A DNA stretch of 64,000 nt from Mytilus edulis (lineage: Eukaryota), in the NCBI RefSeq assembly GCF_963676685.1, contig NC_092348.1, positions 31,186,001-31,250,000 of the forward strand, read 5' to 3'. The position numbers and the translations under genes are program-made. The notes under the pieces are model-generated. The model searched no databases. It saw only the letters and a list, made by a program, of their open reading frames with translations, and was not told where the DNA came from. Shown here one piece after another: positions 1,374-48,600 of the stretch (position 1 is the first letter of the stretch; every line of letters starts with the position of its first letter).

Positions 1374-1637
1374 ATGAGGATTTCCAATCTTTTAACTGCT
1401 ATAGTCTGTTTCTTTTTTTACATAACTTCTATCATGGCTCAATTAAATGTCGACATTTCTGGTGGCGGCGGCGGTGGCGGAGGAGGCGGTGGTGCTCCAG
1501 GCGGAAGAGGAGGAGATGTAATTACAAACATAAGAATCAATGGAGGGGGAAGATTCTTTCGTGGTGGAGGTAATAATCAAGGTGGAAAAGGAAAAGGAAA
1601 AGGACGTGGTAAAGGTAAAGGAAGAGGCTTTGGTTGA
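1374..1637 (+). CDS. Secreted Gly-rich cationic protein, paralog 1 (87 aa; one poly-Gly module; GK/GR tail)
   Basis: Signal-peptide-like N-terminus (..TSIMA|Q); module NVDIS-G11-AP-GGRGG-DVITNIRI shared with six paralogs; acceptor tttttttcag (AG 1361-1362) just before the ATG; AATAAA at 1706-1711 followed by a GT-rich tract. Confidence 0.9.
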   Translation: MRISNLLTAIVCFFFYITSIMAQLNVDISGGGGGGGGGGGAPGGRGGDVITNIRINGGGRFFRGGGNNQGGKGKGKGRGKGKGRGFG

Positions 1638-5399: not shown

Positions 5400-5729
5400 A
5401 TGAGGATTTCCAATCTTTTGATAGTTGCAATATGTATCATATTTTACATTACTTCTATCATGGCTCAATTTAATGTCGACATTACTGGTGGCGGCGGAGG
5501 AGGTGGGGGAGGCGGTGGCGGTCCAGGCGGAAGAGGAGGAGATATAATTACAAACATAAGAATAAACGGAGGTGGCAGATTCCTTCGTGGTGGAGGTAAT
5601 AATCAAGGCGGAAGAGGTAATCAAAGAGGGAATGGAAGAGGAAACGGAAGAGGAAATGGAAGAGGAATTAGTAGAGGAAATGGTAGAGGAAATGGACGTG
5701 GTAAAGGTAAAGGAAGAGGGAGAGGTTGA
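5400..5729 (+). CDS. Secreted Gly-rich cationic protein, paralog 2 (109 aa; one module; (GRGN)n tail)
   Basis: Closely similar to paralog 1 at protein and DNA level, with 22 extra codons of GRGN-type repeats; acceptor AG 5389-5390. Confidence 0.9.
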   Translation: MRISNLLIVAICIIFYITSIMAQFNVDITGGGGGGGGGGGGPGGRGGDIITNIRINGGGRFLRGGGNNQGGRGNQRGNGRGNGRGNGRGISRGNGRGNGRGKGKGRGRG

Positions 5730-13457: not shown

Positions 13458-13889
13458 ATGAATTGTTCAATCATTATTGTGATAGCTTCAATATCTATTG
13501 TGTATTACCTCAACTCTGTTACTGCTCAAGTTAATGTCAACATTAATGGTGGCGGTGGTGGCGGCGGAGGTGGTGATCAAGCTCCAGGTGGAAGAGGTGG
13601 TGATATTAATACTAAGATTATCATAAAAGGAAGTGGTAGAGGAGGTTGGAAAGGAGGAAGACGAGGGGACAGAAGAGGAGGTGGAAGAGCCGTCCAAGGC
13701 AGATTAAATAATCAAGGTGGGAGACGGGGAAATCAAATCGGGGGCAGAGGGAGAGGACAGGTTAGAGGGAGAGGACAAGTTGTAGGGAGAGGACAACTTG
13801 GAGGAAGAAGACAACTAATAAGAGGTCTAAGAAGACAAGTTAGAAGATTACTGGGAAATCCTGTTGGGCCCAGGTTTAGACGATTTTAA
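13458..13889 (+). CDS. Secreted Gly/Arg-rich protein, paralog 3 (143 aa; one module; RGG and GRGQ repeats)
   Basis: Signal peptide (..NSVTA|Q); module NVNIN-G9-DQAP-GGRGG-DINTKIII; acceptor AG 13447-13448; AATAAA 13910-13915. Confidence 0.9.
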   Translation: MNCSIIIVIASISIVYYLNSVTAQVNVNINGGGGGGGGGDQAPGGRGGDINTKIIIKGSGRGGWKGGRRGDRRGGGRAVQGRLNNQGGRRGNQIGGRGRGQVRGRGQVVGRGQLGGRRQLIRGLRRQVRRLLGNPVGPRFRRF

Positions 13890-18254: not shown

Positions 18255-18683
18255 ATGAATGGTTCAATCATTATTGTGATAGCTTCAATATCTGTTGTAT
18301 TTAACCTCAATTCAGTAACTGCCCAAGTAAATGTCGACATAACTGGAGGCGGAGGCGGAGGCGGAGGCGGTGGTGGTGATCAAGCACCTGGTGGTAGAGG
18401 TGGCGATATTAATACAAAAATTATCATAAAAGGAGGTGGAAGAGGAGGTAAAAGAGGAGGTAGAAAAGGATTTCGAAAAGGAGGTAAAGGCAGATTAAAT
18501 AATAAAGGTAGAAGACGAGGAGGACAAAACATCGGGGGTAGAGGGAGAGGAAATTTTGAAGGAAGAGGACAAGTTCGAGGGAGAGGACAAGTTAGGGGAC
18601 GAGGACAAATTCGAGGACTAGGACGAGGCGGGGGTCAGTATAGAGGATCACTAGGATATGCTGGTGGATTTAGACGTTTTTAG
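18255..18683 (+). CDS. Secreted Gly/Arg-rich protein, paralog 4 (142 aa; one module)
   Basis: Paralog of 13458-13889 (similar signal peptide, DQAPGGRGGDINTKIII, C-terminal FRRF); acceptor AG 18244-18245; AATAAA 18703-18708. Confidence 0.9.
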   Translation: MNGSIIIVIASISVVFNLNSVTAQVNVDITGGGGGGGGGGGDQAPGGRGGDINTKIIIKGGGRGGKRGGRKGFRKGGKGRLNNKGRRRGGQNIGGRGRGNFEGRGQVRGRGQVRGRGQIRGLGRGGGQYRGSLGYAGGFRRF

Positions 18684-25899: not shown

Positions 25900-26345
25900 A
25901 TAACGATGTTAAAAACCTATCAATATTTTTGGCTTATTTGTTCCTGAACTAATGGTCTTCTGATTTATAATATCAATTTCAAATTCTAGTAAATTTTAAT
26001 TTCAACTAAGATCACCCTAAGATATGACACCATTATATCATTTTAATCAAATATCTCAAAAAGGAGTTCAATAACCTATCAATATTTTTTGCATATTTGT
26101 TCCTTAACTAATGCTCTTCTGATTTATAGTATCAATTTCAAATTCTAGTGTTTTTTTTATTAAATTTCAATTAAGTACATCCATAATTATAACACAATAA
26201 TATTTAAAATCAAATATCTCAAAATAGAGTTCGACAACCAAATAATATTTTTGGCTTATTTGTTCCTTAAGTAATGCTCTTCTGACCTATAGTATCAACT
26301 TCAAAATCTAGTAAGTACATCCTTTAAAATAACACAATAATAACT
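25900..26345. repeat. About three tandem units of about 160 bp upstream of paralog 5
   Basis: aatatttttggcttatttgttcct..cttctga..tatcaa..tctagt near 25920, 26080, 26245. Confidence 0.75.
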
Positions 26346-26696: not shown

Positions 26697-27200
26697 ATGA
26701 AAGTTTCAAACTGTTTATTAACAATCCTTATCTTTTACAATTATTGTTCTGAGCTGACCTTTGGACAGAAAGGTCACAACAATGGTTTAAATTTGAATAT
26801 ATCTGGAGGAGGGGGTGGCGGAGGTGGCGGAATTGGTCCAGGAGGAGACGGCGGAAGCGTAATAACTAACCTGAATATCAAGAAAATAAAAAATGTTCGC
26901 AAGAATAAAGGCGACAGACAAAAGATTAAGTTAGCAAACGGGATAACTCTTGAAGGATTTAATTTGAATATCAATGGCGGTGGCGGTGGTGGCGGCGGTG
27001 GTTTGGGTGCAGGAGGCGATGGTGGAGACATTATCACTAATGTAAATGTGGGGAAGATGAAGAATGTTGATAAGGTAAAACCTTTGAAGAAAAAAAAAGA
27101 CAAAAAAGACAAAAAGAAAGACAAAAAAAAGAAAAAGAAAGACAAAAAAAGGAAAAAGAAAGACAGAAAAAAGAAAAAGAAAGACAAAAAAACAAAATAA
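26697..27200 (+). CDS. Secreted Gly-rich protein, paralog 5 (167 aa; two modules; poly-Lys/Asp tail)
   Basis: Signal-like N-terminus (..LTFG|Q); two modules 57 aa apart (poly-Gly runs start 26805 and 26976); 37-aa tail with 28 Lys; candidate acceptor AG 26625-26626. Confidence 0.88.
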   Translation: MKVSNCLLTILIFYNYCSELTFGQKGHNNGLNLNISGGGGGGGGGIGPGGDGGSVITNLNIKKIKNVRKNKGDRQKIKLANGITLEGFNLNINGGGGGGGGGLGAGGDGGDIITNVNVGKMKNVDKVKPLKKKKDKKDKKKDKKKKKKDKKRKKKDRKKKKKDKKTK

Positions 27201-27515
27201 AAAGAAGAACCACGATTGGTGTTGATTAGGAAATATTATATGAACAAAGATATAATTAGACACGTTTTTATTATTTCTCTATTGACTGATATTTAAAACA
27301 AAATAAATTCGATTTCTTATATTTCGTTTATGTTTGCCTCATGTTAGACTCGATCGCCCTATATTGAATAAGGACACTTAACAAATTCAAATTCAAATCT
27401 GTATTGCCATAACACTAAATATTTTTAGTACATTGTATGTGACACAACATATCAAAATAAAAAGAAACAATAAACTTAACGAACATATGTTACAGAACCC
27501 CTGATTCATATACTG

Positions 27516-27886
27516 TTTATCTCACTTTACCTGAATGGCCAAGTGAGCTTTTCACATTACTTGGCAACCGTCGTCTGTCGTCATCGGTCGTCATTAAATT
27601 TTACAAAAATCTTCTTCTCTGAAACTACTGAGACAAATTTAACCAAATTTTGCCACAATCATCATTCAGTTATAAATTTCAGAACATGTGTCCGATGACC
27701 CCGCTTGCCAACCAGCAAAGGCCGATATGGACTGAAAATAGAACATAGAGGTAAAATACACTCTTTGGCTTTGAGTTATTATCTCTGACACTGTAGCAAA
27801 AGTAAAATGCTTGCATTACTTCTTCATGAATCAATTGTAAACAAAAATACCAAGTGAGCGACACAGGCTCCTTGGAGCATCTAGTT
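27516..27886 (+). mobile_element. Non-autonomous Helentron (HINE/DINE-1-like)
   Basis: 5' ctcac..gtgagc inverted pair, cgtc microsatellite, 3' gtgagcga plus gctc/gagc hairpin, T-rich ends. Confidence 0.6.
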
Positions 27887-30070
27887 TAAATACATGACCG
27901 GTTGAACTATATTTCTTTTTAGTATCGTAACCGTAAATATAAATACATAGATATAGGAAGATGTGGTGTGAGTGCCAATGAGACAACTCTCCATACAAAT
28001 AAAAATTTAAAAAGTAAACCATTATAGGTTAAAGTACGGCCTTCAACACATGTTCACAATAAGTTACAAAGATAATGATATGTAACAGTTGATGTCAACT
28101 GTTAAACAATTATACTACCTTATCACTGTCGGCCCAGGACTCTTGTTTCACTTCCTTCACATCGATGACACAATAATGTTATTTTTAATCTGAAAATACA
28201 TAATTTGTGCGATTTTTTTTCTATTGAATTAAGGAATATAACCGTAGCTTAGTCATGCAAAGATTTTATAAGCTCTTTATTTTTTTATTGAATAAGATTT
28301 TGATTATCAAATATATTGGCCTCGAGCATCACTGCAAACACACTATTTTTTAATGTTTTTCACCTCTCTGTGGAATTCAAAAACCGACAACTGCCGCTAT
28401 TATAAAAGAGAGGTGAAAATATCAAGGGTGCATTCAAACTCCCAAGTCGAAACTAAACTGACAAACGACATGGCTAAAGAAAACAACAAACAAACAAACA
28501 ACAATGCATGCACATAACAAAACATAGAAAACCAAATACTGTTTCACACGATCCCCAACAAAAACTGGTGCAGCGAAAAGGGTAAGTAGATACTGCTCCA
28601 CTTATGGCACTTGTTGTGCAGCTCATGTTAGTATTAAATTGGTACGTCAAATTCGGGGGAAAAGGGACTGGAGAGCCGTTACATAATTTACCCCTCAGAA
28701 GCGGGTGTTTATTGTTTCCGGATCGACAAACGGCATTATCACCCGTTGCTAATATTATCACATGCTGTTATGGATTGGCGGTGCTTCTGAAAAGTTAGTG
28801 AAGATTAACAAATGGCGCGTTTCAATAAAATGAATGGAAAATATATTGATATGCATAAAAAAAATATCTAGTTTACATTGGCTCAAATATCGATTTTGTC
28901 ATCAGCAAATCAAAACATAACTAAATTTGTATTCTTTTCAATCGGCATGTATAAAACACATTAACGTTTTTTTTATTCTATATAGAGGTTTACTCCTACT
29001 GCTTGTCTATATTTGTGGGGCCATTGTACAAGTCATAACTTCTTTTAAATTAACTGTCCTTGATTTTAAAGTACTAAATCCCTGGGATTTTTTTTAGTTT
29101 TAGTGTGATGTTACACTTTTGTTTCAGATAAGGGTGAAGGTTGAACGTGTTAGTGTGTAAAGCCGCTGCATTCGTTTGCACCTGTCCTAGGTCAGAAATC
29201 TGATGTTCAGTAGTTGTCGTTTGTTGATGAGATTCATAAACCCAAACCGCATAGTCAGCTATAAAAGGCCCTGTAATGACAGATGTTAAACGATTCAAAC
29301 AGAAGACTAACGGCCCGACTCGTGTACAAAACAATGTAAGAAAAACAAATTTGATTTACAGCAACAAACAACAACCTCTGAACTACAGGCTCCTGACATA
29401 GGACAGACGCATGCATGATGTGGGGTTAAACTAGTTTGCTAGCACCAAACTCTCACCTTAATAAGGGACAGCAGTAAAACATAAGAACAATTTACAAAAT
29501 TCAGTTTGAAAGAGCTTATCCTATCATATCGATATACAAAGAGGATAACATGGCAGCACATAAAACACCTTCCAAAATCGAGAGAGAGAGACAATAGGTA
29601 CAGATCTGAGAGTACTTGCAGTCAGCTAGTCAAAATTCAAAAACAAAGAATTAATTAAGACTCTTTCAAAATTAAGTACTGTTATTAGTTAAAGTGAATA
29701 GCAAGAGAGACCATTCCTAGGGAAAAGACATATGTTTTGCAATATAAATTTACAGTTCAATTAAGGATGAATTTCTTTATTTAAGTTTTATTTATAATTT
29801 AATGAAAGGGTGAATTATACACTAAAATACACTAATCCTCAAAAATTTGTATTCGTTTTTGTTTAATTCTTAATTTCTTTTTAAAAAATACTTACGACAA
29901 TTCTATTCTTATACAAAGACTTCACCATTATACACGCGAAGTTATGTAAATGTTGTAATGTTACAAAAAGTCAGTTCAAAGTTAATGCCAATTAAACAAT
30001 TATTTTTATTGTGCACAATTGATATTGTTCCTCCCTTGTTCGTTCACCATTGGATTATGATTTGTTACTT

Positions 30071-31544
30071 CTTATAACAGGGATGATGTCTGAGGGTGAA
30101 TGAGTCTTGTAACAGGGATGATGTCTGAGGGCGAATGAGTCTTATAACAGGGATGATGTCTGAGGGTGAATGAGTCTTATAACAGGGATGATGTCTGAGG
30201 GTGAATGAGTCTTATAACAGGGATGATGTCTGAGGGCGAATGAGTCTGATAACAGGGATGATGTCTGAGGGTGAATGAGTCTTATAACAGGGATGATGTC
30301 TGAGGGCGAATGAGTCTTATAACAGGGATGATGTCTGAGGGTGAATGAGTCTTATAACAGGGATGATGTCTGAGGGCGAATGAGTCTGATAACAGGGATG
30401 ATGTCTGAGGGTGAATGAGTCTTATAACAGGGATGATGTCTGAGGGCGAATGAGTCTTATAACAGGGATGATGTCTGAGGGTGAATGAGTCTTGTAACAG
30501 GGATGATGTCTGAGGGCGAATGAGTCTTATAACAGGGATGATGTCTGAGGGTGAATGAGTCTTATAACAGGGATGATGTCTGAGGGTGAATGAGTCTTGT
30601 AACAGGGATGATGTCTGAGGGCGAATGAGTCTTATAACAGGGATGATGTCTGAGGGCGAATGAGTCTTATAACAGGGATGATGTCTGAGGGCGAATGAGT
30701 CTTATAACAGGGATGATGTCTGAGGGCGAATGAGTCTTATAACAGGGATGATGTCTGAGGGCGAATGAGTCTTATAACAGGGATGATGTCTGAGGGCGAA
30801 TGAGTCTTATAACAGGGATGATGTCTGAGGGCGAATGAGTCTTATAACAGGGATGATGTCTGAGGGCGAATGAGTCTTATAACAGGGATGATGTCTGAGG
30901 GCGAATGAGTCTTATAACAGGGATGATGTCTGAGGGCGAATGAGTCTTATAACAGGGATGATGTCTGAGGGCGAATGAGTCTTATAACAGGGATGATGTC
31001 TGAGGGCGAATGAGTCTTATAACAGGGATGATGTCTGAGGGCGAATGAGTCTTATAACAGGGATGATGTCTGAGGGCGAATGAGTCTTATAACAGGGATG
31101 ATGTCTGAGGGCGAATGAGTCTTATAACAGGGATGATGTCTGAGGGCGAATGAGTCTTATAACAGGGATGATGTCTGAGGGTGAATGAGTCTTATAACAG
31201 GGATGATGTCTGAGGGCGAATGAGTCTTGTAACAGGGATGATGTCTGAGGGCGAATGAGTCTTAAAACAGGGATGATGTCTGAGGGCGAATGAGTCTTAT
31301 AACAGGGATGATGTCTGAGGGCGAATGAGTCTTATAACAGGGATGATGTCTGAGGATGAATGAGTCTTGTAACAGGGATGATGTCTGAGGGCGAATGAGT
31401 CTTAAAACAGGGATGATGTCTGAGGGCGAATGAGTCTTATAACAGGGATGATGTCTGAGGGCGAATGAGTCTTATAACAGGGATGATGTCTGAGGATGAA
31501 TGAGTCTTGTAACAGGGATGATGTCTGAGGGTGAATGAGTCTTG
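30071..31544. repeat. Minisatellite, 42 x 35 bp (CTTATAACAGGGATGATGTCTGAGGGYGAATGAGT)
   Basis: 30071-31540 = 1470 bp = 42 units, with no spacers. Confidence 0.97.
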
Positions 31545-31949
31545 AATTTTGAATCTTGCTATGTTTTGTTTCAAAAACTTATTTTAAAAATCATGGCTAA
31601 AATAAGTCTTAAAACTGTGTTCAATACATATTAGCTACTTTACTTTCATGTGTATACTGTATGGTTTTGTACTGTTGTGTTTTTTTTCTGGTTTCCCTCT
31701 TCCGAACTTAAGACAGTTGCATTCCATTCGTATGACGTGGTAAGCTGTTCATTTTGTCATTTGATAAAGGACTTTTTGTTTAGAATTTTCTGTGGAGATT
31801 GGTGTTTTTTAGTTATTTCCTTTTTGTTATGGTTGATTCAAAACCTCAAGTTAGAATATTTTACTATTCTTTTGTTTTAAAATATTCCAAAATATTTTAC
31901 TTCTTGTATAATATAATTAACGACACTAGCAAATAGATGCACAATAGCA

Positions 31950-32170
31950 CTATAAATATACTCTGAAAAATATTGCAAAAAGTTCTTTTCAGCTTATAGA
32001 CATAATTTATCATTTTGAAGTACACAAGGACACGTGCACCATATGTATGCATGTTATGAAGTAGAATAGTTCAACTTTCTACATTTATTGCTCAGCGTTA
32101 GAATCAAATTTTAAGGTAGGTTATACAACTCTGAAACAATAATGATTTAAATTTGTTTAATTGAATGAAC
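31950..32170 (+). promoter_or_regulatory. Putative promoter and non-coding exon 1 of paralog 6
   Basis: Homologous to 35660-35860; donor AATTTTAAG|GTAGGT (GT 32116-32117), an exon end resembling that of paralogs 1 and 2. Confidence 0.45.
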
Positions 32171-33115
32171 ATTTCGTTTTTTTATGCGTTTTGTTATTTG
32201 ATTTTGCCATGTGATTATGGACTTTCCGAATTAATTTTCCTCTAAATTCAGTATTTTTGTGATTTTACTTTTTTCCATTCAAACAAAATAAATATATACA
32301 TGTATTAGATGAAAGTCAATCCAGAATAACTATTCGGACGCAAAAACTGATTATTTTTTTTTATTTTTATTTTTTTTGCAGTATGACGTTATGTTTGTTT
32401 TGTTTTGTTTTTTTGATTCAAAATTGAAAACAAATTTAATCGCCGTCCGAAAACAAAATAGCTTTAATTATACTTTTTGTGGCACATTTTGGAAATAAAT
32501 TGTTTTAAAAATGTCGATACCGCTTCTTGGTTCATATTATGTCACAAAAAATACGTAACTCATTGAAATAAATGATTTGAAATAATTCCAAGGTTTTGTT
32601 TTGCCGAGCAACATTTGAACAACAAATTTTCTCCCGGAATATTATGGCAGCTTTTAAGATTGTTGAAAAATTCAATAAATACATTAATTTCTAGGAAAAG
32701 CTATTATCAACAAGAAAAAAAAATCTAGCTAGAAATTCTAGATAAAGCAGAAGTATCTGAAGTTCCTAGTTTTGTTTACGTTTTTGTAAATTAAACATAA
32801 ATATAAAACAGACAGGAATATGGCAGTTGTTATCCATTCATTCTATGTGTTTAAACTTTTGGTTTAACCATTTGATAATACTATTCTTTCCATTTTGAAT
32901 TTTTCTAGGAGTTCGGTGCTTTTGCTCTTTTATTTTTACTCGGAATCGGTTGATCGCAGATAGCTGCTCAGTTAAAAGACTAATTGGATACACAGTTTAA
33001 TGGATTTTGTCCACCTAATAACAAAGCTAAAACATGAACTAAACAAAAGAAAGATGTTTGTACGCAGCTATTGTGTGTTTTTCTTTTTTCTTGTAGAAAA
33101 AATACGAACATTCTA

Positions 33116-33868
33116 ATGAATATTATCGGGGTGATTTTGGTACTTGGCATTTTTAACAAATGTGCATGCCATGGCTACTATGGAGATAATTATTACAGAG
33201 GATACGGAGAACTTCCATTGCATAGACCGCAATCAAACGGAAGAGATTGGGAAAAACTATTCAAAAATTTGAAAGCACGTGTTAGTAATTTAGAAAAGGT
33301 TCACCGTAATAATACGGATGGAAACATCAATATTGATATTAAAGGAGGCGGGGGTGGTGGTGGAGGCGGAATCGAACCAGGAGGAAATGGTGGAAATCTA
33401 ACAACTCATTTATTTATTAAGAAAATCAAAACGGTTCATACTAAGGATGGAACAAAAGTCATAATAAAGCCCGGTGATGGGCGAACATTACAAGTGCTTA
33501 AATTAATGATCAAAGGAGAAGGCGGCGGGGGAGGAGGCGGAATGGGTAAGGGTGGCGACGGAGGAAGTATATTTACAAACTTGACAATCAAAACATTTAA
33601 GACTGTATTTAGAGATGGAATAAATGTCACTACTGCTGAGGTTATAAATCCACTAGAAGGGCTCGGTTTGAACATTAAAGGTGGTGGCGGAGGTGGAGGT
33701 GGCGGCACAGGCCCTGGTGGCAACGGCGGCGACTTGGTTACAGCTATTGTCATAGAGAATGTAAAGGATGTAACTATAAACGGAACTTGGACAAAAGAAG
33801 ATAGGAAGGCATGGAAATTAATAAAGAAGTTACGGAGACAAAAGAATAAACAAAATGGAAAAAAATAG
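33116..33868 (+). CDS. Secreted Gly-rich protein, paralog 6 (250 aa; three modules; basic tail)
   Basis: The track start at 33071 is a TTG inside a polypyrimidine tract; acceptor AG 33095-33096 is followed by ATG 33116 (MNIIGVILVLGIFNKCAC|H signal); modules start 33344, 33515, 33680. Confidence 0.88.
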   Translation: MNIIGVILVLGIFNKCACHGYYGDNYYRGYGELPLHRPQSNGRDWEKLFKNLKARVSNLEKVHRNNTDGNINIDIKGGGGGGGGGIEPGGNGGNLTTHLFIKKIKTVHTKDGTKVIIKPGDGRTLQVLKLMIKGEGGGGGGGMGKGGDGGSIFTNLTIKTFKTVFRDGINVTTAEVINPLEGLGLNIKGGGGGGGGGTGPGGNGGDLVTAIVIENVKDVTINGTWTKEDRKAWKLIKKLRRQKNKQNGKK

Positions 33869-35147
33869 GACCTAATGAGTCTAGCTCTTTCCTTGAATTT
33901 TAATATTTCAATGGTTGTGGAGATAAATGATTGAACACTCTCCTATGGTTGAGGAAAGTTGAGTGATAAAAAAATTTGTTAACTCATATATCGATTCTTT
34001 ATGATTCTTGTTAAATTATATCTTTACTAACAATTGAAGCAAAAGCATGAATTGTTTTTTTTTAAACTGCATCATTGATTTGCGACTTACATATTAATGC
34101 AGTTGTTTTTAAAAGAGTTCAGGAAATTATCTTTTCTTTATTATTATTTTCTTATTATCATACACCCATCAACAAATGGAAATATTGCTGGAGTTCAGTT
34201 CGTCCGAAACGCTTTTTCTCATTCAAAACTAAAAACTCCTTAAGCCCAGGAGAACCTAATACCGACATAACAATTTAAATGTAGACATAATGAAACCCAC
34301 CAAAACTCATCGAGATCTCAGCTGCTTTGGAATGGTCGATAGATATTGCTCAAAATCTCATGTTTCACCTAGAAAAAGTCATTACAGATACTTGGCTTAT
34401 CAATTGCTACGCCAGACATGTGTTTCATCTTCATAAGACTCAGCAATGGTACAAACAGTTTGAATGCAAAATAAAATACGAAGTTGAAAAACATAAAAAC
34501 ATGTGCCAAATACGGCCAATGCAATTAATTCATAAGGGTAGAAAACATTAGTGTTTAAAACAATATCCTGTAATATCAACAGTTAAATGTAAAAAAAAAT
34601 ATTTTTAAAATACCGAACTCCGAGGAAAATTCCAAATGGGAAGTTCGTTATCGAATGGCAAAATCAAAAGCTCAAACACATCAAACGAATGGATAACAAC
34701 TGAGACATACATGACTTGGTACAGACAATTTCTTGAAAACCTGGTTTTATAGCTAACTAAACCTCTCACTTGTATGACAGTCGCATACAATTCCATTATA
34801 TTCACAACGATGTGTTAACAAAACAAACAGACGTAATACATGTAATATATAAAAATGTCAAAAAAACGACAAATTAGCAGAACATTAACATATCAATGGT
34901 AAGTACAAAATCTCTGATATTCTCAAGCGAGGATGTTACAATTAAAGAAAAAACGGACGAAATAGTGATAAACAACAATCGGAACATGTCAGTATTTATC
35001 TTTGACATAACATGTTATAACGATCAACTTACTTTTGATGGTGTACGTAAAACTGTCCAGACTTGTTGAAAGGAAGTAGTGCGGGATTAAACTTTGCAAA
35101 AAACTGCTGATTAACAAAATCAATTGAAGTCTTCGATTTGTTTTGTT

Positions 35148-35208
35148 CGATTACAGTGTTCATATGACGAAGCTTCGGATAGAAACCATTCGCGAATTGT
35201 TACGTATA
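35148..35208 (-). pseudogene. Decayed SLC7-paralog exon fragment (YVTIREWFLSEASSYEHCNR)
   Basis: Ungapped 44/61 nt match by hand to 45295-45355 ([20 protein letters not shown]); T-rich tract upstream on the - strand but no clear AG. Confidence 0.6.
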
Positions 35209-35659
35209 AAAATAAAAAAAAAAATAAAAAATACCCCTTAAAATTTGTAATTTTTCACAGACCTTTCCTTATAACTCTGTCTTTTTTCTTTATCAAATAC
35301 TGCTGTCTCTAAGCTGGCGTCTATTGTTTATAAGACAATTTTATCTCTACACAATTCTCCTGTTTCCCATATCACTTCATACCATTTATTGTATAGAAGA
35401 GTTTTTGGAATAATGTATGCTATGCTCACCGATTGATTATTTTTGCTCTATGTATTTGTCTTTGGGGAACCAGATATGAAAAACTTTCTGATAAAAATGC
35501 AATCGAAATACACAATTATACCGTCTTTCTTTATTATTTGTGGTGAAAGATCAATCATCGAATATGTTTAACAATTAATGTTGAACTCCTTTTTATGAAT
35601 TATGCAACCAGTTGATAGATGGCATTATAATATTGCAAAAAATATAAACATCAGGTCAT

Positions 35660-35860
35660 TGCTCTAAAATAAAGTGCATGAAGTTCCTTTGTAACTTATA
35701 GCCTTAACTTTTAGTTTTAAAGTAAACACGGATACACTTTTTGACCATGTATTTAAAGATATTTATAACAAACATTCTGTTGTTCTTGATGGGAAAAAAC
35801 CTAAGCAGGTAAGTTAGACCTCTCTGAAACAATATCAAGGTAAATTTGCTAATTAATAAA
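35660..35860 (+). promoter_or_regulatory. Putative promoter and non-coding exon 1 of paralog 7
   Basis: Homologous to 31950-32170; donor CAG|GTAAGT (GT 35809-35810) followed by the shared ctctgaaacaat. Confidence 0.45.
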
Positions 35861-36720
35861 ATGCATAGAAATAAATATTGTCAACTGTGCTCAAAGATAC
35901 GTTATTACAGATAATTGATTTTTCTATCCTGTAAAACCGGTTTTTTTCTGTTAATTTTCGGAATCGTATATGATATAATACATTTAATATACATAATTTG
36001 TTTTCCGTCAGCTATCAAGGGCCCCGATATGACAATGTAAAACAATTCAAACGAGAAAACTAACGGCCTTATTTATCTAAAAATATGAACGAAAAACAAA
36101 TATTTAACACATAAACAAACGACAACCACTGAATTACAGGCTCCTAATTTGGGACAGGCACATACATAAATAATGTGGCGGGGTTAAACATGTTAGCATG
36201 TTAAAATTGTTTTCATATCTTTAGCATACACAACTCGAATGTTATTGGGATAACTCACAAATTCAATTGTCCTATGGAACAGCGAAAATGTTTTGTATAA
36301 AAGCGCAAATGGCATTTAAAACGCGCAAACGTGACGCGTCGAGATTTGACCACTTGGTTGCTTCAATATGTTTAATAATCAAACAATATCGCCATTATCA
36401 TTTTACCCAATTTTCAAAAGAGTACAAAGTTAACGTAGTAATCTTTAAGATTTTTTTTTTAAAGGGTAATAATATCGGGATGAAAATTAACTACTATTTT
36501 TATATTACATGTGGTGAAAATATGCGATTAAAAACCAAAGGGACATAATAAAATATCATAGATCGCAAATAATCCGCTAATACCATAACAATAAATAAAA
36601 TTTAAAAAATGGGTTAAAATATATTTGTCCATCTTTTTATAATTATTAATAAACATTTAAAAACAAATCAAGGTTTTTAAAGCATTAATTTAGTTCTTTT
36701 CTATTCTTTTTCCAGGAAAG

Positions 36721-37527
36721 ATGAACATCTCAATAATTTACATCAGTTTGATTTTTAATCTTGTCATTTATGACAATTGTTTGGGCCATAGATCCTATGG
36801 AGAAAATTATCGCAGAAGACACGGACGATTATCAAGACAAAGACCACGTTCAAGTACTTTTGGCAGACGATTTGTGAAAAAAAACATACAAAAAGGTCTA
36901 CCGTTGAAAGATCCCGAAATAATTGCTAGCACTACTGATCAGGTAGCACTTTCTAATGTTGACAGAAATATCAATATGAATTTAACAGGAGGCGGAGGTG
37001 GTGGCGGTGGAGGAATCGATCCAGGCGGAAATGGTGGAAATCTTTCTACTAATTTATTTATCAATAAAATCAAGACAATTCACACTAGTGACGGAACAAT
37101 AATCAAAGTTAAACCTGGTGATGGTCGAACATTGGAAGCACTTAAATTGATCATTGACGGAGGAGGTGGCGGGGGAGGAGGAGGAATAGGAAAAGGCGGT
37201 GATGGAGGAAGTATATTTACAACCTTGACAATCAACAAATTAAAGACTGTTTTTAGAAATGGAGCAAATGCAACTTTTGCTGAAGTTCAAAACCCTCTCC
37301 GTGGACTCAGTTTGGAGATTAATGGCGGTGGTGGAGGTGGCGGAGGTGGACCAGGCCAAGGAGGCGATGGTGGCGATTTGGTTACAAATGTTGTCATTGG
37401 AAAAGCTAAAATAGTCACGAAAATTGGCGCTAGAAGAAGAAAAAAGAAAAAGGATCGGAAATTAAAAAGGATGTTGAAGAGGAAAAGGAAGAACAGAGAC
37501 AAGTTTAAGCCATTGCTTAATTACTAG
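36721..37527 (+). CDS. Secreted Gly-rich protein, paralog 7 (268 aa; three modules; Lys/Arg tail)
   Basis: Collinear with paralog 6 (e.g. KPGDGRTL, GKGGDGGSIFT); modules start 36988, 37159, 37324; acceptor AG 36714-36715; AATAAA 37599-37604. Confidence 0.9.
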   Translation: MNISIIYISLIFNLVIYDNCLGHRSYGENYRRRHGRLSRQRPRSSTFGRRFVKKNIQKGLPLKDPEIIASTTDQVALSNVDRNINMNLTGGGGGGGGGIDPGGNGGNLSTNLFINKIKTIHTSDGTIIKVKPGDGRTLEALKLIIDGGGGGGGGGIGKGGDGGSIFTTLTINKLKTVFRNGANATFAEVQNPLRGLSLEINGGGGGGGGGPGQGGDGGDLVTNVVIGKAKIVTKIGARRRKKKKDRKLKRMLKRKRKNRDKFKPLLNY

Positions 37528-40500
37528 TTGTGATTGGAAGCAAAATGACAACACAAAGTTATCAAAAGAACTTTGACAAAAGGCTTTACTTTTTCCTGAA
37601 TAAATCAACAATGGCTTAAAAAAGTTGATGCTTAATTTCAAACTGAATAAAATATGTACGAACCAAAATTCCACCCAAAACTAACCCATATTTAACGACA
37701 AAAAATCCTTCAACTTTACTGAATTCATAAATTGTACTAATATGATCTGTTCTATTCTGCAAACATATTGTCTTAAAACCAGCGCTTCTTACTTTACACC
37801 AATTTGTGTCAACGTCAGATAACAATAAGGCATACAATTTGTTACTCAAATATTGCAGCATAATGATTCTTTATAAGAACTCTTCCAGTCGATATTCATA
37901 TTTGCTGATGTTGTTATATTGATATACAAGTGTAAAACGTTATATTTGATTTGTATGATAGGTAGCGACTGCAACCCCGATATTAGTGGGACAATCTTGT
38001 TTAAATTATATTTGTCTGTGTCATGTTTTAGTGATTGTTTGTCATTTTGCTCTGTGCTGTTTATATTGGCTGTTATTATTCCATATAGTTTGATTTAACC
38101 ACTTTCGTATATGTATATAATGTTTGTATAAGATGACATTTATTTCATAATGAAACGCCTCATTGGAAACGACTAAAAATAATAAAAACATCTGTAAAAT
38201 CTGTGTTGTTTGCTTTTTTCATCTGAAATTATTTCCCTGCATAACCAGAGTTATTGTAAGCGTTTATGCATGAAATCAAGGCATAAAAACGTTTATAGTT
38301 TGAACTTGTAAAGCTTTAAATTTGAAAGTTATACACTGTATGAATATTTTTATAATTACCTATAAAGATAATAAGCAAGAATTGTGACAATACAATTTAA
38401 CTGTCATGAGATAACACTACATCTCATATTAAGGCAAAAACAAAATAACTTACTTTTAGATCAAGAATTACTGCCATGATGTTGTTCCCGAAGCATAAAG
38501 GCAAACAATATAATATTATTCCAATATAATTTAGTTATAAAACACGTTAGGAGTCCAAATCTTTAGGTTTAGGTTTGAAACACATTGACTACTTTCCCCT
38601 TGACTCAAAATTTAAAACATCGTTTCCTTTTCGTATTGACCTTCTATTTTACAGCTAGTGTGTGTACACATGATATTCGATAATGATTCCTGTTGATACT
38701 TATTCGACAGATCATTTGATAAAACTAATTTCAAGAAATTACCGCATCAATTATATGGTATCCAAATTTTATCGTTCTGCTTTGCATTTATTTACAGTCC
38801 AAAAACATTAGAAGACATGGTATGTTAACTAATGAGACAATTTCTATTAATGAGAAACTAAATTATGTTTCAACAATAAGCGAAAACATGTGAAACATAC
38901 AGCAAATCAAAGACTAGTACTGTATTACAAACTCCTCTTTTTGGACAGACACATAAAGAATGTAAAATTATGTTTAAAAAAGAAGATGTGGTATGATTGC
39001 GATTAGACAAAAGACACTAAATGACACAGAAATTAAAAACTAAAGGTCATCAACAATATGCAAAGCCTATATCGCATAGTCAGCCTTGTCTATGTATAAA
39101 AAAACATATATGTAACACATTAACAAACGACAACCACTGAGTTACAGGCTCCAGACTTGGGACAGGCACATGAATACTAAATGTGGCGGGGTTAAACATC
39201 TTAGCGGGATGCCAACCCTCCCACTAACATGTCCAGTGTATAACAGTACAACATAAGAACGAACTATAAAAATCTCTTGAAAAAGTCTAACTTATCAGAT
39301 GGATAAAACTACAAATACTACAAATAAAAGTGGACGTGGCCGGGTACTTGTACATCCTAACAACAAAAGACACCAAGTGAAGATTTGAGATTACTCAAAG
39401 TTACTGACAGCTAGTTCAAAGCCATTAATAACTAAAAAAAAACTGCATATAAGACCAAATTATCAATCAGTACACATCCAACATTCAATCGGGATTTGGT
39501 GTTAAGACGTCATAAACAGTCGGAGAAAAACATGACCTTGTGCAATACCTAGGTACGTGTTGTTAACCCAAAGTTTTGTACGATCAGGGACCTTGCTCTA
39601 CATAAAGCAACTGTCATGTTGACCACTGCAATTCAAATCTAGCGAGTATTTGCAGTTACTAAAGTCGAGTTCAAACGTCCATTTCAACTTATAAATAAAT
39701 AATGTTTTCATATTTGAAAAGTGTGTATGTGTTGTTGTCCGGCCAGTTTTTTTTATCACTTGTCCATTTCAGTAATGATTAATGAATGCATAACCCATTA
39801 GGCGTTTGCTCTTCTTTCTATTAAGAATCCCTAAATGACATTGTTTCGTCGTATTAATTGTTCTCCCTAATTATTTACTTGTTTAATACCTTTGTTATGC
39901 AGACGTTTTACATCTTACAGATCGTTCCAGTCATAACCTGTACATCAAGTTAATTTGTTGACCAGATATTTCGGCAGGGGAAAATTACCTAGTAACGGTT
40001 TTGTTAACGGCTCCGGTCGGTCCTTAGACCAAAGCCAGGTAACCACGGAAACAATAATTGTATTTAACATTTTTTTAATGAAACACATGTAAAGCAAAAT
40101 GTGGTATGAAAAGTTCTAAACAATATGAGGGTCAAATACAGATAAGCATCCGTTCTCTTGTTGTTTTTATGCATGATTTATCACTTTGAAATGAACAAGG
40201 AGACACCACGTGAATTAAAAAACAATAGTATATAAAGAATATTCAATTGTTTTTTGTAGGAAAAAATATCATACAGGTAAGTAATTATACAGAGCAAATC
40301 AGAAGGAAAAGAAAATTGTAAAAGACGCGAGAAAGAAACTAATGAAAGCAATGCAAAATCAAAGAAAGAAAATGAAATGGATCGAAAAAGAAGGTAAAAA
40401 GACTAGAGAATGAAGAGAACGGAATAGATGTGATGAAAAAAATGATATGTTCGTCCTTATTGTGCTCTGATATTGTCTTGAAGTGTGAATGTATGAATTT

Positions 40501-45600: not shown

Positions 45601-48600
45601 GTTGTGTCATCAGCGAAAGTTTGACATAATTATGAAAAATAGCTATTCTTGTATTGTAAACAAAATAAGTATCCTTTTCCATATTTCATGTTAACAATAA
45701 CAATAAACACATGGTATTATCGCTATTGTTACAGATGAAAATGAAATAGACATTGCTTTCGAAGCACTTTTTTTATTTACAATCATACGGAACGCTCAAA
45801 CAAAGATATTTAAAAGCGAGAGGAAGTTAATACGCTGACTTGTAAGAAGCTTTATGATAAAAAAAAAAGGAAAAAAAAGAACCTTAACAAAAGAGGGAGG
45901 AAAGATACCAAAGGGACAGTCAAACTCATAAATCTAAAACAAACTGACAACGCCATGGCTAAAATGAAAAAGACTAACAGAAAAACAATAGTACACATGA
46001 CACAACATAGAAAACTAAAGAATAAACAACACTAACCCCACCAAAAACTAGGAGTGATCTCGGGTGCTCCGGAAGGGTAAGCAGATCCTGCTCCACATGT
46101 GGCACCCGTCGTGTTGCTTATGTGATTACAAATCCGGTAAATAGACTAATTCGGTAGGTCACATTCATGAAAGGGAAGGGGATTGTAGTTACGACGTAAG
46201 AAACATATCCGATATCATTTGTGAAACGGTTATTCCATAACGGTCAACCAACTCGTGATGGCGTCCGATTAGCCACATTAATAACAGGTATATACCCTTA
46301 CAGATACTAGTATAATTTTTATAACCACCTTTTAAACTCCATCTGTATTCACCTTGTTTTAACATCTTAAACAACGGAAATAGAATATCCTTTAAACACC
46401 ATATTCAATCTGCAAATGTTTCTAACAATGGGTCGATGCATCTACTGGTGGACTGTTCATTCCTGGCATGAACACACGGATGTTGTTATCAAATTTTTAA
46501 AAATGTGTAGTCAGTAGTAAGCACTTCTGTGTTGACTTGCGTTATCATTGATATGTTCATAATTATAAATTAACTGTTAACAAAACTTTGAACTTTTTAA
46601 ATACTATGTTTTTTTGACCTCAGAAATAGATTACCTTTTGCTATATTTGGCAAAAGTTTTAGGAATTTGTTGTCTTCTGTGCTCTTAACTTCGTACTTTA
46701 TTTGGTTTTTTAACATTTTTTTATTCGAACTTCACTGTTGAGTCTTTTGTAGACGAAATGCGCGTCTGTCGTAAAAAAATAAATTAATCCTGGTATATAT
46801 GATGAGTTTATGTTTATAAAGGAATCTTTCATGTGCAAAACTAGTATTCCTTGCGTGGATTTGGCTTTACGTTTTTGTCCTTTTCGTTTATCATATTTTT
46901 ATGATTTGTAATTGCTAATATTTGACCTAAGCCATTAGTGAAGAGATGCTGTTTTAACGAAATGCTCATCGGATGAAGACAAATTGATACCGTTATTGTT
47001 ATGTTAAAAGAGGGACGAACGATACCAAAGGGACAGTCAAACTCAAAAATCTAAAATATATATATGTTACATATACTGTTAATATCTTGGTATATATTAC
47101 CTTCCTCCACTCAATAGGGTATCATCGGATGAAGACAGATTGATACCGTTATTATTATGTTACATATAATGTTAATATCTTGGTATATATTACCTTCCTC
47201 CACTGAATAGGGTACCATCGGATAAAGACAAATTGATACCGTTATTGTTATGTTACATATAATGTTAATATCTTGGTATATATTACCTTCCTCCACTGAA
47301 TAGGGTACCATCGGATGAAGACAAATTGATACCGTTATTGTTATGTTACATATAATGTTAATATGTTGGTATATATTACCTTCCTCCACTGAATAGGGTA
47401 CCGTTATTGTTATGTTACATATAATGTTAATATCTTGGTATATATTACCTTCCTCCACTGAATAGGGTACCATTAGCAGCACCAAAGGTAGAAAATAAAA
47501 CAGCTAAGGGCATGAGAATAGCTGCTCCCCCTAAAACTCTGTCTCCCCATGTCTGTAATAAATACACATATCTTTTGAGTCGTTCAAAGCAGCAGTTTTA
47601 TTTACACATATTGACAGTAAAGTGATCGTGGGTAAACAGTTTTATATTTATACGAAACAAGAACAAATGTATGCTTATTAAAATGTCGTAATTGATTTTA
47701 ATTTGTAATTCTCAAATTCATTTTAATGTAAATACCTTTCAAATACGCCATGCGCAGTACAATTGGCCTGAATTTGAAGTCGGTCACTGCAAAGAAAAAG
47801 AGGCATCTCTGTTTGTTTAATAACGGTATATTATTTGCGGGTTGTCTGTAGTTGTACACGTGCTTACGTGGAACAATCATATAAGTTGTGTCAACACACA
47901 TCGGGTGCAATGAGGTTTGGACATTCTTACTCATCGACGAAAAAGTGGCAATGCTCGGGAATAACACTGCACATACCGAGTATGAAACGCACAGCTTTGC
48001 AGATGATTCAGAAAACGAAAAACGCATACTAATTAATTTAATATTCTAGTATGCATGGCTAAATGCATTCATTTTGTTGGTGGATATTAATGGGTTGTTA
48101 AAACTTAAAGGTACACTTTAAAAGCCACTACATTTTTAAACAATAAAATGTTTAATACCGGTACCTTATTTCTAAATATTCATTGACCTCATAAGACCAA
48201 TAAAATATGTAATGCTGTTATTAGCTGTAGAAATATAAAAAATGTTGAACCATATAATAAAACAATATAAATTATGTAACCATTATGCATAATGTATGGG
48301 TCAATTAACTTCTCATACTTTTATAAATGAGACAAATAAATAACGAGGTACAATCTGCTTTAAACAAAAATGTACGAAATATGTAATACTTTCTCGAAAA
48401 GACCACACACAACCAAGAAAAAACAACAACCTTGATATGGTTAAATGAAATTAGGGGACACTGCAGTTTATTTAATCCAAATGTTTTCAGTACTACCTCA
48501 CATCTTAATTCTTATTTAAAAGTAATATTGCACAAAACTCATACAATACGTAATTTAGTCAAGAGGAAATACAGATGAATTTGATGCTAATTTGACATAA

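What the first reader, a model, noticed from the sequence alone, without database searches (positions are those of the whole stretch)
26805..37410. Poly-Gly tract fixed at nine residues between two strand-like segments: predicted polyglycine II hairpin fold
Seen: in all eight modules of paralogs 5-7 the spacing is exactly 9 Gly positions (one has a G-to-E change), then 3 residues, then GG[DN]GG. The runs are encoded by mixed GGA/GGC/GGT/GGG codons, so they are not a slipping microsatellite. In paralogs 1-3 the first Gly to Pro distance is 12 residues even though the Gly count differs (11, 12, 9); paralog 4 has 14. Both flanks alternate hydrophobic and polar residues (NVDIT; ITNIRI). Established: PGII helices have 3 residues per turn and pack into hexagonal bundles. 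Strand-PGII-turn-PGII-strand topology occurs in the ALK/LTK glycine-rich domain; PGII bundles also occur in the phage gp38 adhesin and snow flea antifreeze protein. Inference: the module is folded, not disordered.
Basis: partly seen in the sequence, partly recalled or inferred. Interest (0 to 1): 0.85.

Follow-up and report, generated by a model that had tools for sequence, protein, structure and literature searches.

The report
Mussel secreted proteins with polyglycine hairpins
A mussel-only cluster of small, very basic secreted proteins repeats a module with exactly nine glycines that structure prediction folds into a bundle like the snow flea antifreeze protein, which would add a new natural family to a rare fold class; its function is untested.

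Summary
The window comes from a Mytilus genome. Seven same-strand genes encode cysteine-free secreted proteins (mature pI 10-12). They carry 12 copies of one module: a beta-strand, a Gly run, a short turn, GGxGG[DNS]hxT, and a second strand.

In paralogs 5-7 all eight modules read 9 Gly positions + 3 + GG[DN]GG. At the 13 Gly codons, base positions 1 and 2 are invariant apart from one GAA. Third positions are close to random, so this is neither a microsatellite nor gene conversion. Of 86 modules from alleles and orthologs in at least four Mytilus species, 83 passed the register check and none shows an in-frame length change.

AlphaFold2 models of paralog 7 and of the paralog 6 core have low to moderate confidence, and the Gly hairpins are their most confident parts. 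A search of 48,161 solved chains that does not use Foldseek ranks snow flea antifreeze protein first for both. It aligns 79-80 of that protein's 81 residues at 2.3-2.4 A, Z 6.9-8.0. A nine-helix springtail antifreeze protein ranks second, and the next hit is at Z 3.4-4.0. ALK/LTK did not appear and gp38 was weak.

So three hairpins probably form a six-helix polyproline-II-type bundle. This is a prediction, not a demonstration. The paralog 1-4 claims are weaker. Function is unknown. The scan also noted this cluster under s1-836127.

The parts
26697..27200 (+). Paralog 5 CDS (167 aa): signal-like N-terminus, two Gly-hairpin modules, poly-Lys/Asp tail
   Evidence: The M. trossulus ortholog P0009 keeps the 9+3+5 spacing with a G-to-I change at position 7.
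26805..26867 (+). P5 module 1: G9, IGP turn, GGDGGSVIT
26976..27038 (+). P5 module 2: G9, LGA turn, GGDGGDIIT
33116..33868 (+). Paralog 6 CDS (250 aa from the first ATG): signal-like N-terminus, low-confidence basic/Tyr-rich N-terminal region, three-module core, K/R-rich tail
   Evidence: AF2 model of the core (33299-33790): mean pLDDT 61.3.
33344..33406 (+). P6 module 1: G9, IEP, GGNGGNLTT
33515..33577 (+). P6 module 2: GEGGGGGGG (GAA at 33518-33520), MGK, GGDGGSIFT
33680..33742 (+). P6 module 3: G9, TGP, GGNGGDLVT
36721..37527 (+). Paralog 7 CDS (268 aa): same architecture as P6. Identical to an NCBI protein (P0011) from a 97-Mb Mytilus contig.
   Evidence: AF2 model: mean pLDDT 51.
36988..37050 (+). 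P7 module 1: G9, IDP, GGNGGNLST
37159..37221 (+). P7 module 2: G9, IGK, GGDGGSIFT
37324..37386 (+). P7 module 3: G9, PGQ, GGDGGDLVT
1374..1637 (+). Paralog 1 CDS (87 aa): signal, one module (G11-AP-GGRGGDVIT, 1461-1526), Gly/Arg/Lys tail
5400..5729 (+). Paralog 2 CDS (109 aa): signal, one module (G12-P-GGRGGDIIT, 5487-5552), RGN/RGG repeat tail
13458..13889 (+). Paralog 3 CDS (143 aa): signal, one module (G9-DQAP-GGRGGDINT, 13548-13613), Arg/Gly-rich tail
18255..18683 (+). Paralog 4 CDS (142 aa): signal, one module (G11-DQAP-GGRGGDINT, 18345-18416), Arg/Gly-rich tail. The M. trossulus ortholog P0008 has G9.
40285..40413 (+). Remnant of an eighth family member: 42-codon open frame, 85% identical to the last 40 residues of P0007. 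The rest of that gene is absent from the window.

Best explanation
The window holds a Mytilus-restricted tandem cluster of genes for small, cysteine-free, strongly cationic secreted proteins. They are built from a folded Gly-hairpin module.

Each module is a beta-strand that runs straight into an all-Gly extended helix of the polyglycine/polyproline II type (9 residues, about three turns). A 3-residue turn, often containing Pro or Gly, follows. The chain returns through GGxGGxhxT, whose non-Gly positions 3, 6 and 9 (D/N/R/K; D/N/S; invariant T) recur every third residue and so lie on one face of such a helix. The chain then continues as the second beta-strand.

In the three-module proteins P6 and P7, the three hairpins pack into a six-helix, two-layer bundle with the geometry of snow flea antifreeze protein. 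The roughly 40-residue inter-module segments form a beta-sheet base, and a K/R-rich tail hangs off the end.

What is shown: the sequence anatomy, the selection on every Gly and against indels, the restriction to Mytilus, and the fact that AlphaFold2 builds this bundle.

What is inferred: that the real protein adopts the bundle; that the single-module paralogs 1-4 need self-association or a partner to do the same; and the function. My best guess for function is an extracellular polyanion-binding or host-defence role, in which the Gly bundle is a rigid scaffold and the cationic tail the binding part.
For: - Anatomy and codon evidence. There are 13 Gly columns across 8 modules. Codon positions 1 and 2 are invariant except for one GAA, while third-position diversity is 0.43-0.82.
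- Length constancy: 83 of 86 modules in 35 proteins passed the 9+3 register check, with no in-frame length variant. Substitutions inside G9 occur only at positions 1, 2, 4, 7 and 9.
- The 160-residue core of P6/P7-type proteins aligns without indels, while the N-terminal region and the tails carry indels.
- AF2 on P7: mean pLDDT 51; the Gly-hairpin blocks reach 61-75, against 22-33 for the N-terminal region.
- AF2 on the P6 core: mean pLDDT 61.3, pTM 0.54; Gly-hairpin blocks 69-79.
- VIA-align against 48,161 chains, P7 model: 2pne_A Z 7.4, rmsd 2.4 A, 80 of 81 residues; 7jjv_B Z 6.5; third hit Z 3.4.
- Same search, P6 model: 2pne_A Z 6.9, rmsd 2.3 A, 79 of 81; 7jjv_B Z 5.0; third hit Z 3.6.
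- Second look at Foldseek's candidates: 3bog_A Z 8.0, 2.4 A, 79 of 81.
- The aligned model range (12-149 of the P6 core) is the stretch from the first hairpin to the third. About 26 residues per hairpin would account for the 79 aligned residues.
- Known Gly-rich PPII bundles have 2-4-residue turns rich in Gly/Pro/Asn/Thr and antiparallel successive helices, and helices with more neighbours hold more Gly (10.1101/2023.11.25.568672). The module fits these rules.
- The mussel's own Obg-type gene contains GPDGGDGGNGGHVVL. This resembles GPGGDGGSVIT, and the Obg N-domain is a solved six-PPII-helix bundle.
- Real-gene features: a T-run plus CAG acceptor lies 8-12 nt before the ATG in 6 of 7 genes. 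Several species have annotated orthologs. Many allelic copies sit on 1-1.7 kb Logan contigs.
Against: - The models are not confident. No residue reaches pLDDT 90. Only one of five models (P7) or two of five (P6 core) exceed mean pLDDT 50. The alignments hold 8-9 closely related sequences.
- AlphaFold2 was trained on the snow flea structure, and 28-31% of aligned positions are identical simply because both are Gly-rich. The bundle could be recalled rather than inferred.
- The search tool's own note says a best Z of 7-8 is typical for models without a clear relative.
- Foldseek gave nothing at E <= 0.001.
- The snow flea protein depends on two disulfides for stability, and these proteins have no cysteine.
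- A two-layer six-helix bundle does not require all nine residues of a helix to be Gly, so the complete invariance of G9 is not fully explained.
- I could not read model coordinates, so the backbone angles of the Gly segments were not checked directly.
- There are no expression, proteomic or biophysical data.
Confidence: 0.55

Rival explanations
1. The Gly runs are flexible, disordered linkers or elastic spacers of selected length between short beta-hairpins. This would be ordinary low-complexity glycine-rich secreted protein of the shell-matrix, byssus or cuticle type, with no defined Gly fold.
For: Mean pLDDT is only 51-61 and most of the five AF2 models fail to fold. There is no Pfam or PDB sequence match beyond artificial (G4S)n linkers. 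NCBI's automatic names are driven by composition (cabeza-like, fibrillarin-like, cuticular protein-like). Tract length does vary in the paralog 1-4 group (G9, G11, G12).
Against: A linker under selection for flexibility alone would tolerate Ser/Ala/Asn and length changes. Here every Gly and the exact length are held while synonymous sites are saturated, in 83 of 86 modules across species. The second segment has a strict three-residue period with an invariant Thr. The Gly segments are the most confident part of the models, not the least.
Confidence: 0.22
2. The conserved GGxGG[DN]hxT unit is a calcium-binding turn of the RTX beta-roll kind (consensus GGxGxDxUx). On this reading the modules stack as a beta-solenoid, and the G9 run forms one arc of each coil rather than a PGII helix.
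For: GGDGGDIIT, GGRGGDVIT and GGDGGDLVT fit the nonapeptide consensus by eye. Foldseek's weak top hits include beta-solenoids such as FapC amyloid and ice-binding beta-helices. An RTX block appears at Z 2.3. Mussels secrete many Ca-binding matrix proteins (general knowledge).
Against: There is only one such nonapeptide per 56-57-residue module, not a tandem array. The Asp position is often Ser or Asn. No hit to the RTX family or any other Ca-binding family at E <= 10. The structural matches to solenoids and RTX are at noise level (Z about 2.3-2.6), against 6.9-8.0 for the PPII bundles.
Confidence: 0.08
3. The fold reading is right, and the function is ice binding. The proteins would then be a convergent mussel counterpart of springtail antifreeze proteins, helping intertidal Mytilus survive freezing.
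For: The only clear structural neighbours are two antifreeze proteins. The exposed stripe of the second helix carries Asn/Asp/Ser/Thr at about 9 A spacing, and such ordered Thr/Asn arrays occur on ice-binding faces (general knowledge). M. trossulus and M. edulis tolerate freezing, and osmolytes do not fully explain this; macromolecular cryoprotectants have been proposed (10.1101/2021.08.30.458284).
Against: A shared fold shows no function. Springtail antifreeze proteins use a flat Ala-rich face that is absent here. Net charges of +9 to +32 with long K/R tails are not a feature of known antifreeze proteins. The family is also present in the warm-temperate M. galloprovincialis and in M. californianus. 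No expression or cold-induction data are available.
Confidence: 0.07

Closest known systems
Springtail antifreeze proteins (snow flea, PDB 2PNE/3BOG; Granisotoma rainieri, 7JJV)
   Same: Best and only clear structural matches of both AF2 models: Z 6.9-8.0, rmsd 2.3-2.4 A, 79-80 of 81 residues. Both have six antiparallel Gly-rich PPII-type helices in two layers joined by short turns, and both are small secreted proteins.
   Different: There is no sequence relationship beyond Gly content (one search lists no antifreeze protein). Here the helices come as three separate hairpins, separated by about 40-residue beta segments instead of short turns. One helix of each pair is pure Gly rather than Gly-X-X. 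These proteins have no disulfides and no Ala-rich face, and they carry long cationic tails.
Obg GTPase N-terminal domain (Obg fold, PF01018; PDB 1LNZ)
   Same: Six PPII helices in two layers, without disulfides, joined by segments that include beta-strands and flanked by cationic residues. The GGxGGxGG motifs run into a beta-strand. The mussel's own copy reads GPDGGDGGNGGHVVL, close to the module's GPGGDGGSVIT.
   Different: No PF01018 hit in any of the seven proteins at E <= 10. Obg did not appear among the top 50 structural matches. Obg is cytosolic, attached to a GTPase, and has no all-Gly nonamer.
ALK/LTK extracellular glycine-rich domain (PF12810) and phage S16 gp38 adhesin (PDB 6F45)
   Same: Both contain all-Gly PPII helices inside a bundle, with beta structure attached. 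gp38 appears in the lists at Z 2.3-2.4 with 30% identity.
   Different: ALK/LTK did not appear in any search, and PF12810 gave no hit. The gp38 score is at noise level. Those bundles have 10-14 helices with fully surrounded central helices, whereas the model here has six.
Glycine-rich cationic antimicrobial peptides of arthropods; cysteine-free Mytilus myticalins
   Same: Small secreted precursors that are cysteine-free and strongly cationic. The genes form lineage-restricted tandem clusters with presence/absence variation. Myticalins show that Mytilus uses linear Cys-free cationic peptides (PMC12294457).
   Different: No sequence similarity and no activity data. According to PMC12294457, no glycine-rich antimicrobial peptide has been identified in any bivalve, so this would be a first, not a membership.

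Membership tests
Glycine-rich polyproline-II helical bundle domains (a structural class, not a homologous family) | Several Gly-rich segments of about 6-12 residues in PPII conformation, packed side by side | tested here: inconclusive
   Two AF2 models superpose on 2PNE/3BOG at 2.3-2.4 A over 79-80 of 81 residues. However, pLDDT of the segments is only 61-79, and I could not read coordinates to check backbone angles.
Glycine-rich polyproline-II helical bundle domains (a structural class, not a homologous family) | Successive helices antiparallel, joined by short turns of 2-4 residues rich in Gly/Pro/Asn/Thr | tested here: met
   Within each module the two Gly segments are joined by exactly 3 residues (IGP, IEP, IDP, TGP, PGQ, IGK, MGK, LGA). 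The criterion is taken from 10.1101/2023.11.25.568672.
Glycine-rich polyproline-II helical bundle domains (a structural class, not a homologous family) | Three-residue periodicity of non-Gly positions (the outward face), with Gly content rising with the number of neighbouring helices | tested here: met
   In GGxGGxhxT the non-Gly polar residues sit at positions 3, 6 and 9 in all 12 window modules and all orthologs. G9 is all Gly. The number of neighbours could not be measured.
Springtail antifreeze proteins | Sequence homology (Gly-X-X repeats, conserved Cys pairs) and ice-binding activity | tested here: not met
   No antifreeze protein among the PDB sequence hits at E <= 10. No cysteine in the mature proteins. 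Activity cannot be tested here.
ALK/LTK glycine-rich domain (PF12810) | Match to the family profile; bundle of 14 (nematode ALK homolog: 10) helices embedded in a TNF-like domain | tested here: not met
   No PF12810 hit at E <= 10 in any of the seven proteins. There are only sub-threshold touches of PF21722 (E 0.95 and 3.6, against a cut-off of 24.3 bits). ALK/LTK is absent from the structural match lists.
Obg fold (PF01018) | Match to the family profile | tested here: not met
   No hit at E <= 10. The genome's true Obg-type exons are elsewhere on the contig. The likeness is only at motif level.
RTX calcium-binding beta-roll (GGxGxDxUx tandem nonapeptides) | Tandem array of nonapeptide repeats | tested here: not met
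   One nonapeptide-like unit per 56-57-residue module, no family hit, and a structural Z of only 2.3.

The most novel reading that the evidence does not exclude
This is a de novo, Mytilus-specific protein family that independently arrived at the polyglycine-II bundle. It would be the first such fold in a mollusc and the first built from a repeatable 'strand-G9-turn-GGxGGx-strand' cassette used in one, two or three copies.

The complete invariance of all nine glycines would mean that the G9 helices are buried on all sides. That would imply bundle-to-bundle assembly into a polyglycine-II lattice outside the cell, with cationic tails on the surface. Such an assembly could act as a self-assembling extracellular material, as an antimicrobial or polyanion-binding particle, or as an ice-binding surface.
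Probability: 0.2. Interest if true: 0.85.

Novelty: new variant of a known kind. Interest (0 to 1): 0.62.

Why it matters
Natural Gly-rich PPII bundles are known from only about six unrelated protein groups (10.1101/2023.11.25.568672), and they are of interest as a third kind of building block for protein design.

A modular, disulfide-free, single-exon-encoded cassette that occurs in one, two and three copies would be a natural experiment in how many helices such a bundle needs. It would also give an easy target for CD, NMR and crystallography.

For mussel biology, this is an unannotated, genus-restricted cluster of strongly cationic secreted proteins. A recent survey (PMC12294457) states that no glycine-rich defence peptide is known in any bivalve, so paralogs 1-4 are obvious candidates to test. 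The resemblance to antifreeze proteins also gives a concrete hypothesis to test for freeze tolerance in intertidal mussels.

Tried and rejected
- **Sequence searches.** Pfam gave no hit above any family's curated cut-off and none related to the Gly module. PDB sequence hits were only artificial (G4S)n linkers of scFv constructs. A profile search of 1.84 billion representative proteins found three proteins, all members of this Mytilus family. A word-based search with P2 found nothing. The ESM Atlas gave no usable hit.
- **Foldseek** against the PDB and viral models found nothing at E <= 0.001.
- **Homo-trimer test** of the P2 module (residues 23-62, three copies): the tool returned 'no answer', score 0.03 against a mark of 0.32. 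This is evidence neither for nor against self-association.
- **Antisense poly-Pro ORFs** opposite the Gly runs (for example 26774-27187 and 33436-33753 on the minus strand) are shadows of the sense genes.
- **Weak genome hits** on contigs C3 and C8 are plain G-run simple repeats, not family members.
- **Slippage or gene conversion** as the cause of the fixed length is rejected because third codon positions differ freely between modules.
- **Beta-sheet part of the models.** The matches to ribosomal protein uS11 and kinase N-domains are at Z 3-4 and are not interpreted.
- **Bacterial promoter/terminator scan**: irrelevant for a eukaryotic gene.

Full report
**What is in the sequence**

The window is AT-rich (about 32% G+C) and comes from a Mytilus (mussel) chromosome. 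Paralog 7 is letter-for-letter an NCBI Mytilus protein on a 97-Mb contig (P0011). Its nearest relatives are annotated in M. galloprovincialis, M. edulis, M. trossulus and M. californianus.

Six-frame translation finds 12 Gly runs of nine or more positions (one interrupted by a G-to-E change), all on the + strand and all inside complete ORFs that start with a hydrophobic, signal-like N-terminus. There are four single-module genes: P1 1374-1637, P2 5400-5729, P3 13458-13889 and P4 18255-18683. P5 (26697-27200) has two modules. P6 (33116-868) and P7 (36721-37527) have three each.

In six of the seven genes a T-run plus CAG lies 8-12 nt upstream of the ATG. This looks like a splice acceptor, so the whole coding sequence sits in one terminal exon. 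The predicted mature proteins have no cysteine, pI 10-12 and net charge +9 to +32. The charge comes from tails of different composition: RGG/RGN repeats, Arg/Gly repeats, poly-Lys, or a K/R-rich predicted helix.

**Checking the observation**

- All eight modules of P5-7 read [h-x-h-x-h-x] G9 [3 residues] GG[DN]GG [DNS] h-x-T [h-x-h...], with one Gly-to-Glu change (GAA, 33518-33520).
- Codons are a mixture of GGA, GGC, GGT and GGG.
- Across the eight modules, the 13 Gly codon columns show zero diversity at codon positions 1 and 2, apart from that one change. Third-position diversity is 0.43-0.82, which is near saturation.
- This pattern excludes replication slippage and recent gene conversion. 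It means each glycine, and the absence of indels, has been held by selection over a long divergence.
- The first-Gly-to-Pro distances in paralogs 1-4 (12, 12, 12, 14) are as stated.

Two refinements are needed. The equivalent distance in P5-7 is 11. The M. trossulus ortholog of P4 has G9 where the window has G11, so the tract is strictly fixed only in the multi-module group.

**Alleles and orthologs**

I collected 35 proteins of the multi-module group: the three from the window plus 32 database proteins, among them allelic variants from Logan, ENA and NCBI assemblies. They contain 86 recognisable modules.

Eighty-three passed the 9+3 register check. Of the three that failed, two are faulty gene models and one is a Leu-to-Trp change in the strand with an intact G9. 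No in-frame G8 or G10 variant was seen. Degenerate modules keep the spacing (VGGGGGDGG-ITA-GGDGG; GGGNGGSGR-ITP-SGDGG).

Substitutions inside G9 occur only at positions 1, 2, 4, 7 and 9, never at 3, 5, 6 or 8. The excess at 1/4/7 (one phase of a three-residue helix) is suggestive, but the events are too few to test.

A few truncated database entries are frameshifted in or near a Gly run (for example P0018, P0027, P0031 and P0033). I cannot tell assembly error from null alleles.

The 160-residue core aligns without gaps between P6-type and P7-type proteins, which are 56-60% identical. The N-terminal region and the tails carry indels.

**How widespread the family is**

Within this genome the family is confined to this cluster. 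Two weak hits elsewhere are plain G-run repeats.

A profile search of 1.84 billion representative proteins returned only three proteins, all belonging to this Mytilus family. Pfam, PDB sequences and the ESM Atlas gave nothing meaningful. The family is therefore restricted to Mytilus, as far as these databases reach, and is undescribed.

**Structure prediction**

AlphaFold2 on P7 with an 8-sequence alignment gave mean pLDDT 51. The N-terminal 85 residues were at 22-33, the core at 51-75 and the tail helix at 77-78.

AlphaFold2 on the P6 core with 9 sequences gave mean pLDDT 61.3 and pTM 0.54.

In both models each 17-residue Gly segment is flanked by long beta-strands, and the blocks containing the Gly hairpins are the most confident of the core (61-79).

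Confidence is nevertheless modest. Only one (P7) or two (P6 core) of the five models exceed a mean of 50.

**Fold comparison**

Foldseek found nothing at E <= 0.001 in either library, although the springtail protein 7JJV was already rank 2 against the PDB.

VIA-align, which does not depend on Foldseek, compared each model with 48,161 representative chains:

| Model | Search | Top hit | Second hit | Next hit |
|---|---|---|---|---|
| P7 | 48,161 chains | 2PNE snow flea AFP: Z 7.4, rmsd 2.4 A, 80 of 81 residues | 7JJV nine-helix Granisotoma AFP: Z 6.5 | Z 3.4 |
| P6 core | 48,161 chains | 2PNE: Z 6.9, rmsd 2.3 A, 79 of 81 residues | 7JJV: Z 5.0 | Z 3.6 |
| P6 core | second look at Foldseek's candidates | 3BOG snow flea AFP: Z 8.0, rmsd 2.4 A, 79 of 81 residues | - | - |

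The aligned model range (12-149 of the P6 core) runs from the first hairpin to the third. About 26 residues per hairpin would account for the 79 aligned residues. The three hairpins thus correspond, in order, to helix pairs 1-2, 3-4 and 5-6 of the antifreeze protein.

The tool warns that a Z of 7-8 is not exceptional in itself. What counts here is that:

- they cover almost the whole target;
- they stand well clear of the rest;
- the result repeats with a second paralog.

So AlphaFold2 does build a PPII-type six-helix bundle. Phage gp38 appears only at Z 2.3-2.4, and ALK/LTK not at all.

**Fit to the known rules of such bundles**

A comparative study of all solved Gly-rich PPII bundles (10.1101/2023.11.25.568672) lists six groups: springtail antifreeze proteins, Obg, acetophenone/acetone carboxylases, gp38, ALK and LTK. 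It finds:

- antiparallel successive helices;
- turns of 2-4 residues rich in Gly, Pro, Asn and Thr;
- a Gly content that rises with the number of neighbouring helices;
- tolerance of very different flanks, including beta-strands and cationic residues in Obg.

The module fits these rules. It has a 3-residue turn that usually holds Pro or Gly. It has an all-Gly first segment. Its second segment, GGxGGxhxT, has non-Gly residues at positions 3, 6 and 9, which lie on a single face of a three-residue helix, and the Thr is invariant in every module examined.

The mussel's own Obg-type gene reads GPDGGDGGNGGHVVL, close in style to GPGGDGGSVIT. This is a likeness of motif, not homology, because PF01018 does not match the family.

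**What remains weak or unexplained**

- AlphaFold2 was trained on the snow flea structure, and the 28-31% identity in the structural alignments is Gly matching Gly. The bundle may be recalled rather than deduced.
- I had no access to coordinates, so I could not verify PPII backbone angles or count neighbours.
- The snow flea protein relies on disulfides, and these proteins have none. If the bundle is real, the beta-sheet base must stabilise it, as in Obg.
- A two-layer six-helix bundle does not need nine of nine glycines in a helix. Their complete invariance hints at further packing, for instance bundle against bundle, but this is speculation.
- For the single-module paralogs 1-4 the tract length varies. 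The trimer prediction returned no answer (not evidence either way).

**Function**

Nothing here tests function. The facts are these: the proteins are secreted, cysteine-free and extremely basic; the tails differ between paralog groups; the genes form a genus-restricted tandem cluster; and a deletion has left only the last 42 codons of an eighth member at 40285-40413.

These facts fit a fast-evolving extracellular effector. I rank an antimicrobial or polyanion-binding role first and an extracellular-matrix role (shell, byssus, mucus) second. Ice binding is a minor possibility, resting only on fold resemblance and on the open question of macromolecular cryoprotectants in freeze-tolerant Mytilus (10.1101/2021.08.30.458284).

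A recent survey states that no glycine-rich antimicrobial peptide is known from any bivalve (PMC12294457). Paralogs 1-4 (mature 65-119 residues, 34-48% Gly, pI 12) are therefore worth testing.

Expression, population tract-length variation and ortholog DNA therefore could not be examined.

**Verdict**

This is best described as a new, unrelated protein family predicted to use a known but rare architecture in a new modular form. The scan's first stage also noted the cluster as a whole (s1-836127) and the poly-Lys tail (s1-836271) on this same window.

Noticed in passing
window 30070-31543: A 35-bp satellite (unit TCTTATAACAGGGATGATGTCTGAGGGCGAATGAG) in 42 tandem copies, 97% matching, lies between paralogs 5 and 6. 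It causes the local G+C and GC-skew peak.
   Followed up: partly
window 40285-40413 (+): A 42-codon open frame is 85% identical to the C-terminal 40 residues of P0007, an eighth family member that is complete in other Mytilus assemblies and fused to the P7 ortholog in the M. californianus gene model P0003. The rest of that gene is missing here: a deletion or a presence/absence variant.
   Followed up: partly
window 1362-1373, 5388-5399, 13446-13457, 18243-18254, 33095-33115, 36708-36720: A polypyrimidine run plus CAG lies 8-12 nt upstream of the ATG (about 20 nt in P6, which reads TAG) in six of the seven genes. This suggests a non-coding first exon and a conserved intron position, with the whole CDS in the last exon.
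   Followed up: no
window 1537-1634, 5553-5726, 13614-13886, 18417-18680, 27087-27197, 33790-33865, 37400-37524: Each paralog group reaches a high positive charge with a different tail: GRG/GKG and RGN repeats, RGQV-type Arg/Gly repeats ending in RRF, poly-Lys/Asp, or a K/R-rich predicted helix (pLDDT 77-78). P1 and P2 end in Gly, which could be an amidation signal. The poly-Lys tail was also noted by the first stage as s1-836271.
   Followed up: partly
window 43-108 (- strand); L013, L014: A G-run simple repeat at the very start of the window has flanks similar to G-run repeats on contigs C3 and C8. It is probably a dispersed repeat carrying a microsatellite and is unrelated to the gene family.
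   Followed up: partly
window 4009-4569; 8205-8452; 25914-26312; 47063-47475: Further tandem repeats with periods of 276, 91, 163 and 93/69 bp lie in the intergenic DNA of the cluster and downstream of it.
   Followed up: no
P0003, P0004, P0022 (database gene models): Public gene models of this locus are often wrong. P0003 fuses two neighbouring genes, P0004 is a chimera that jumps from the third module of one gene into the next, and P0022 has a spurious N-terminus. Paralogs 1, 2, 3 and 5 of this genome are not in the protein collection at all.
   Followed up: partly
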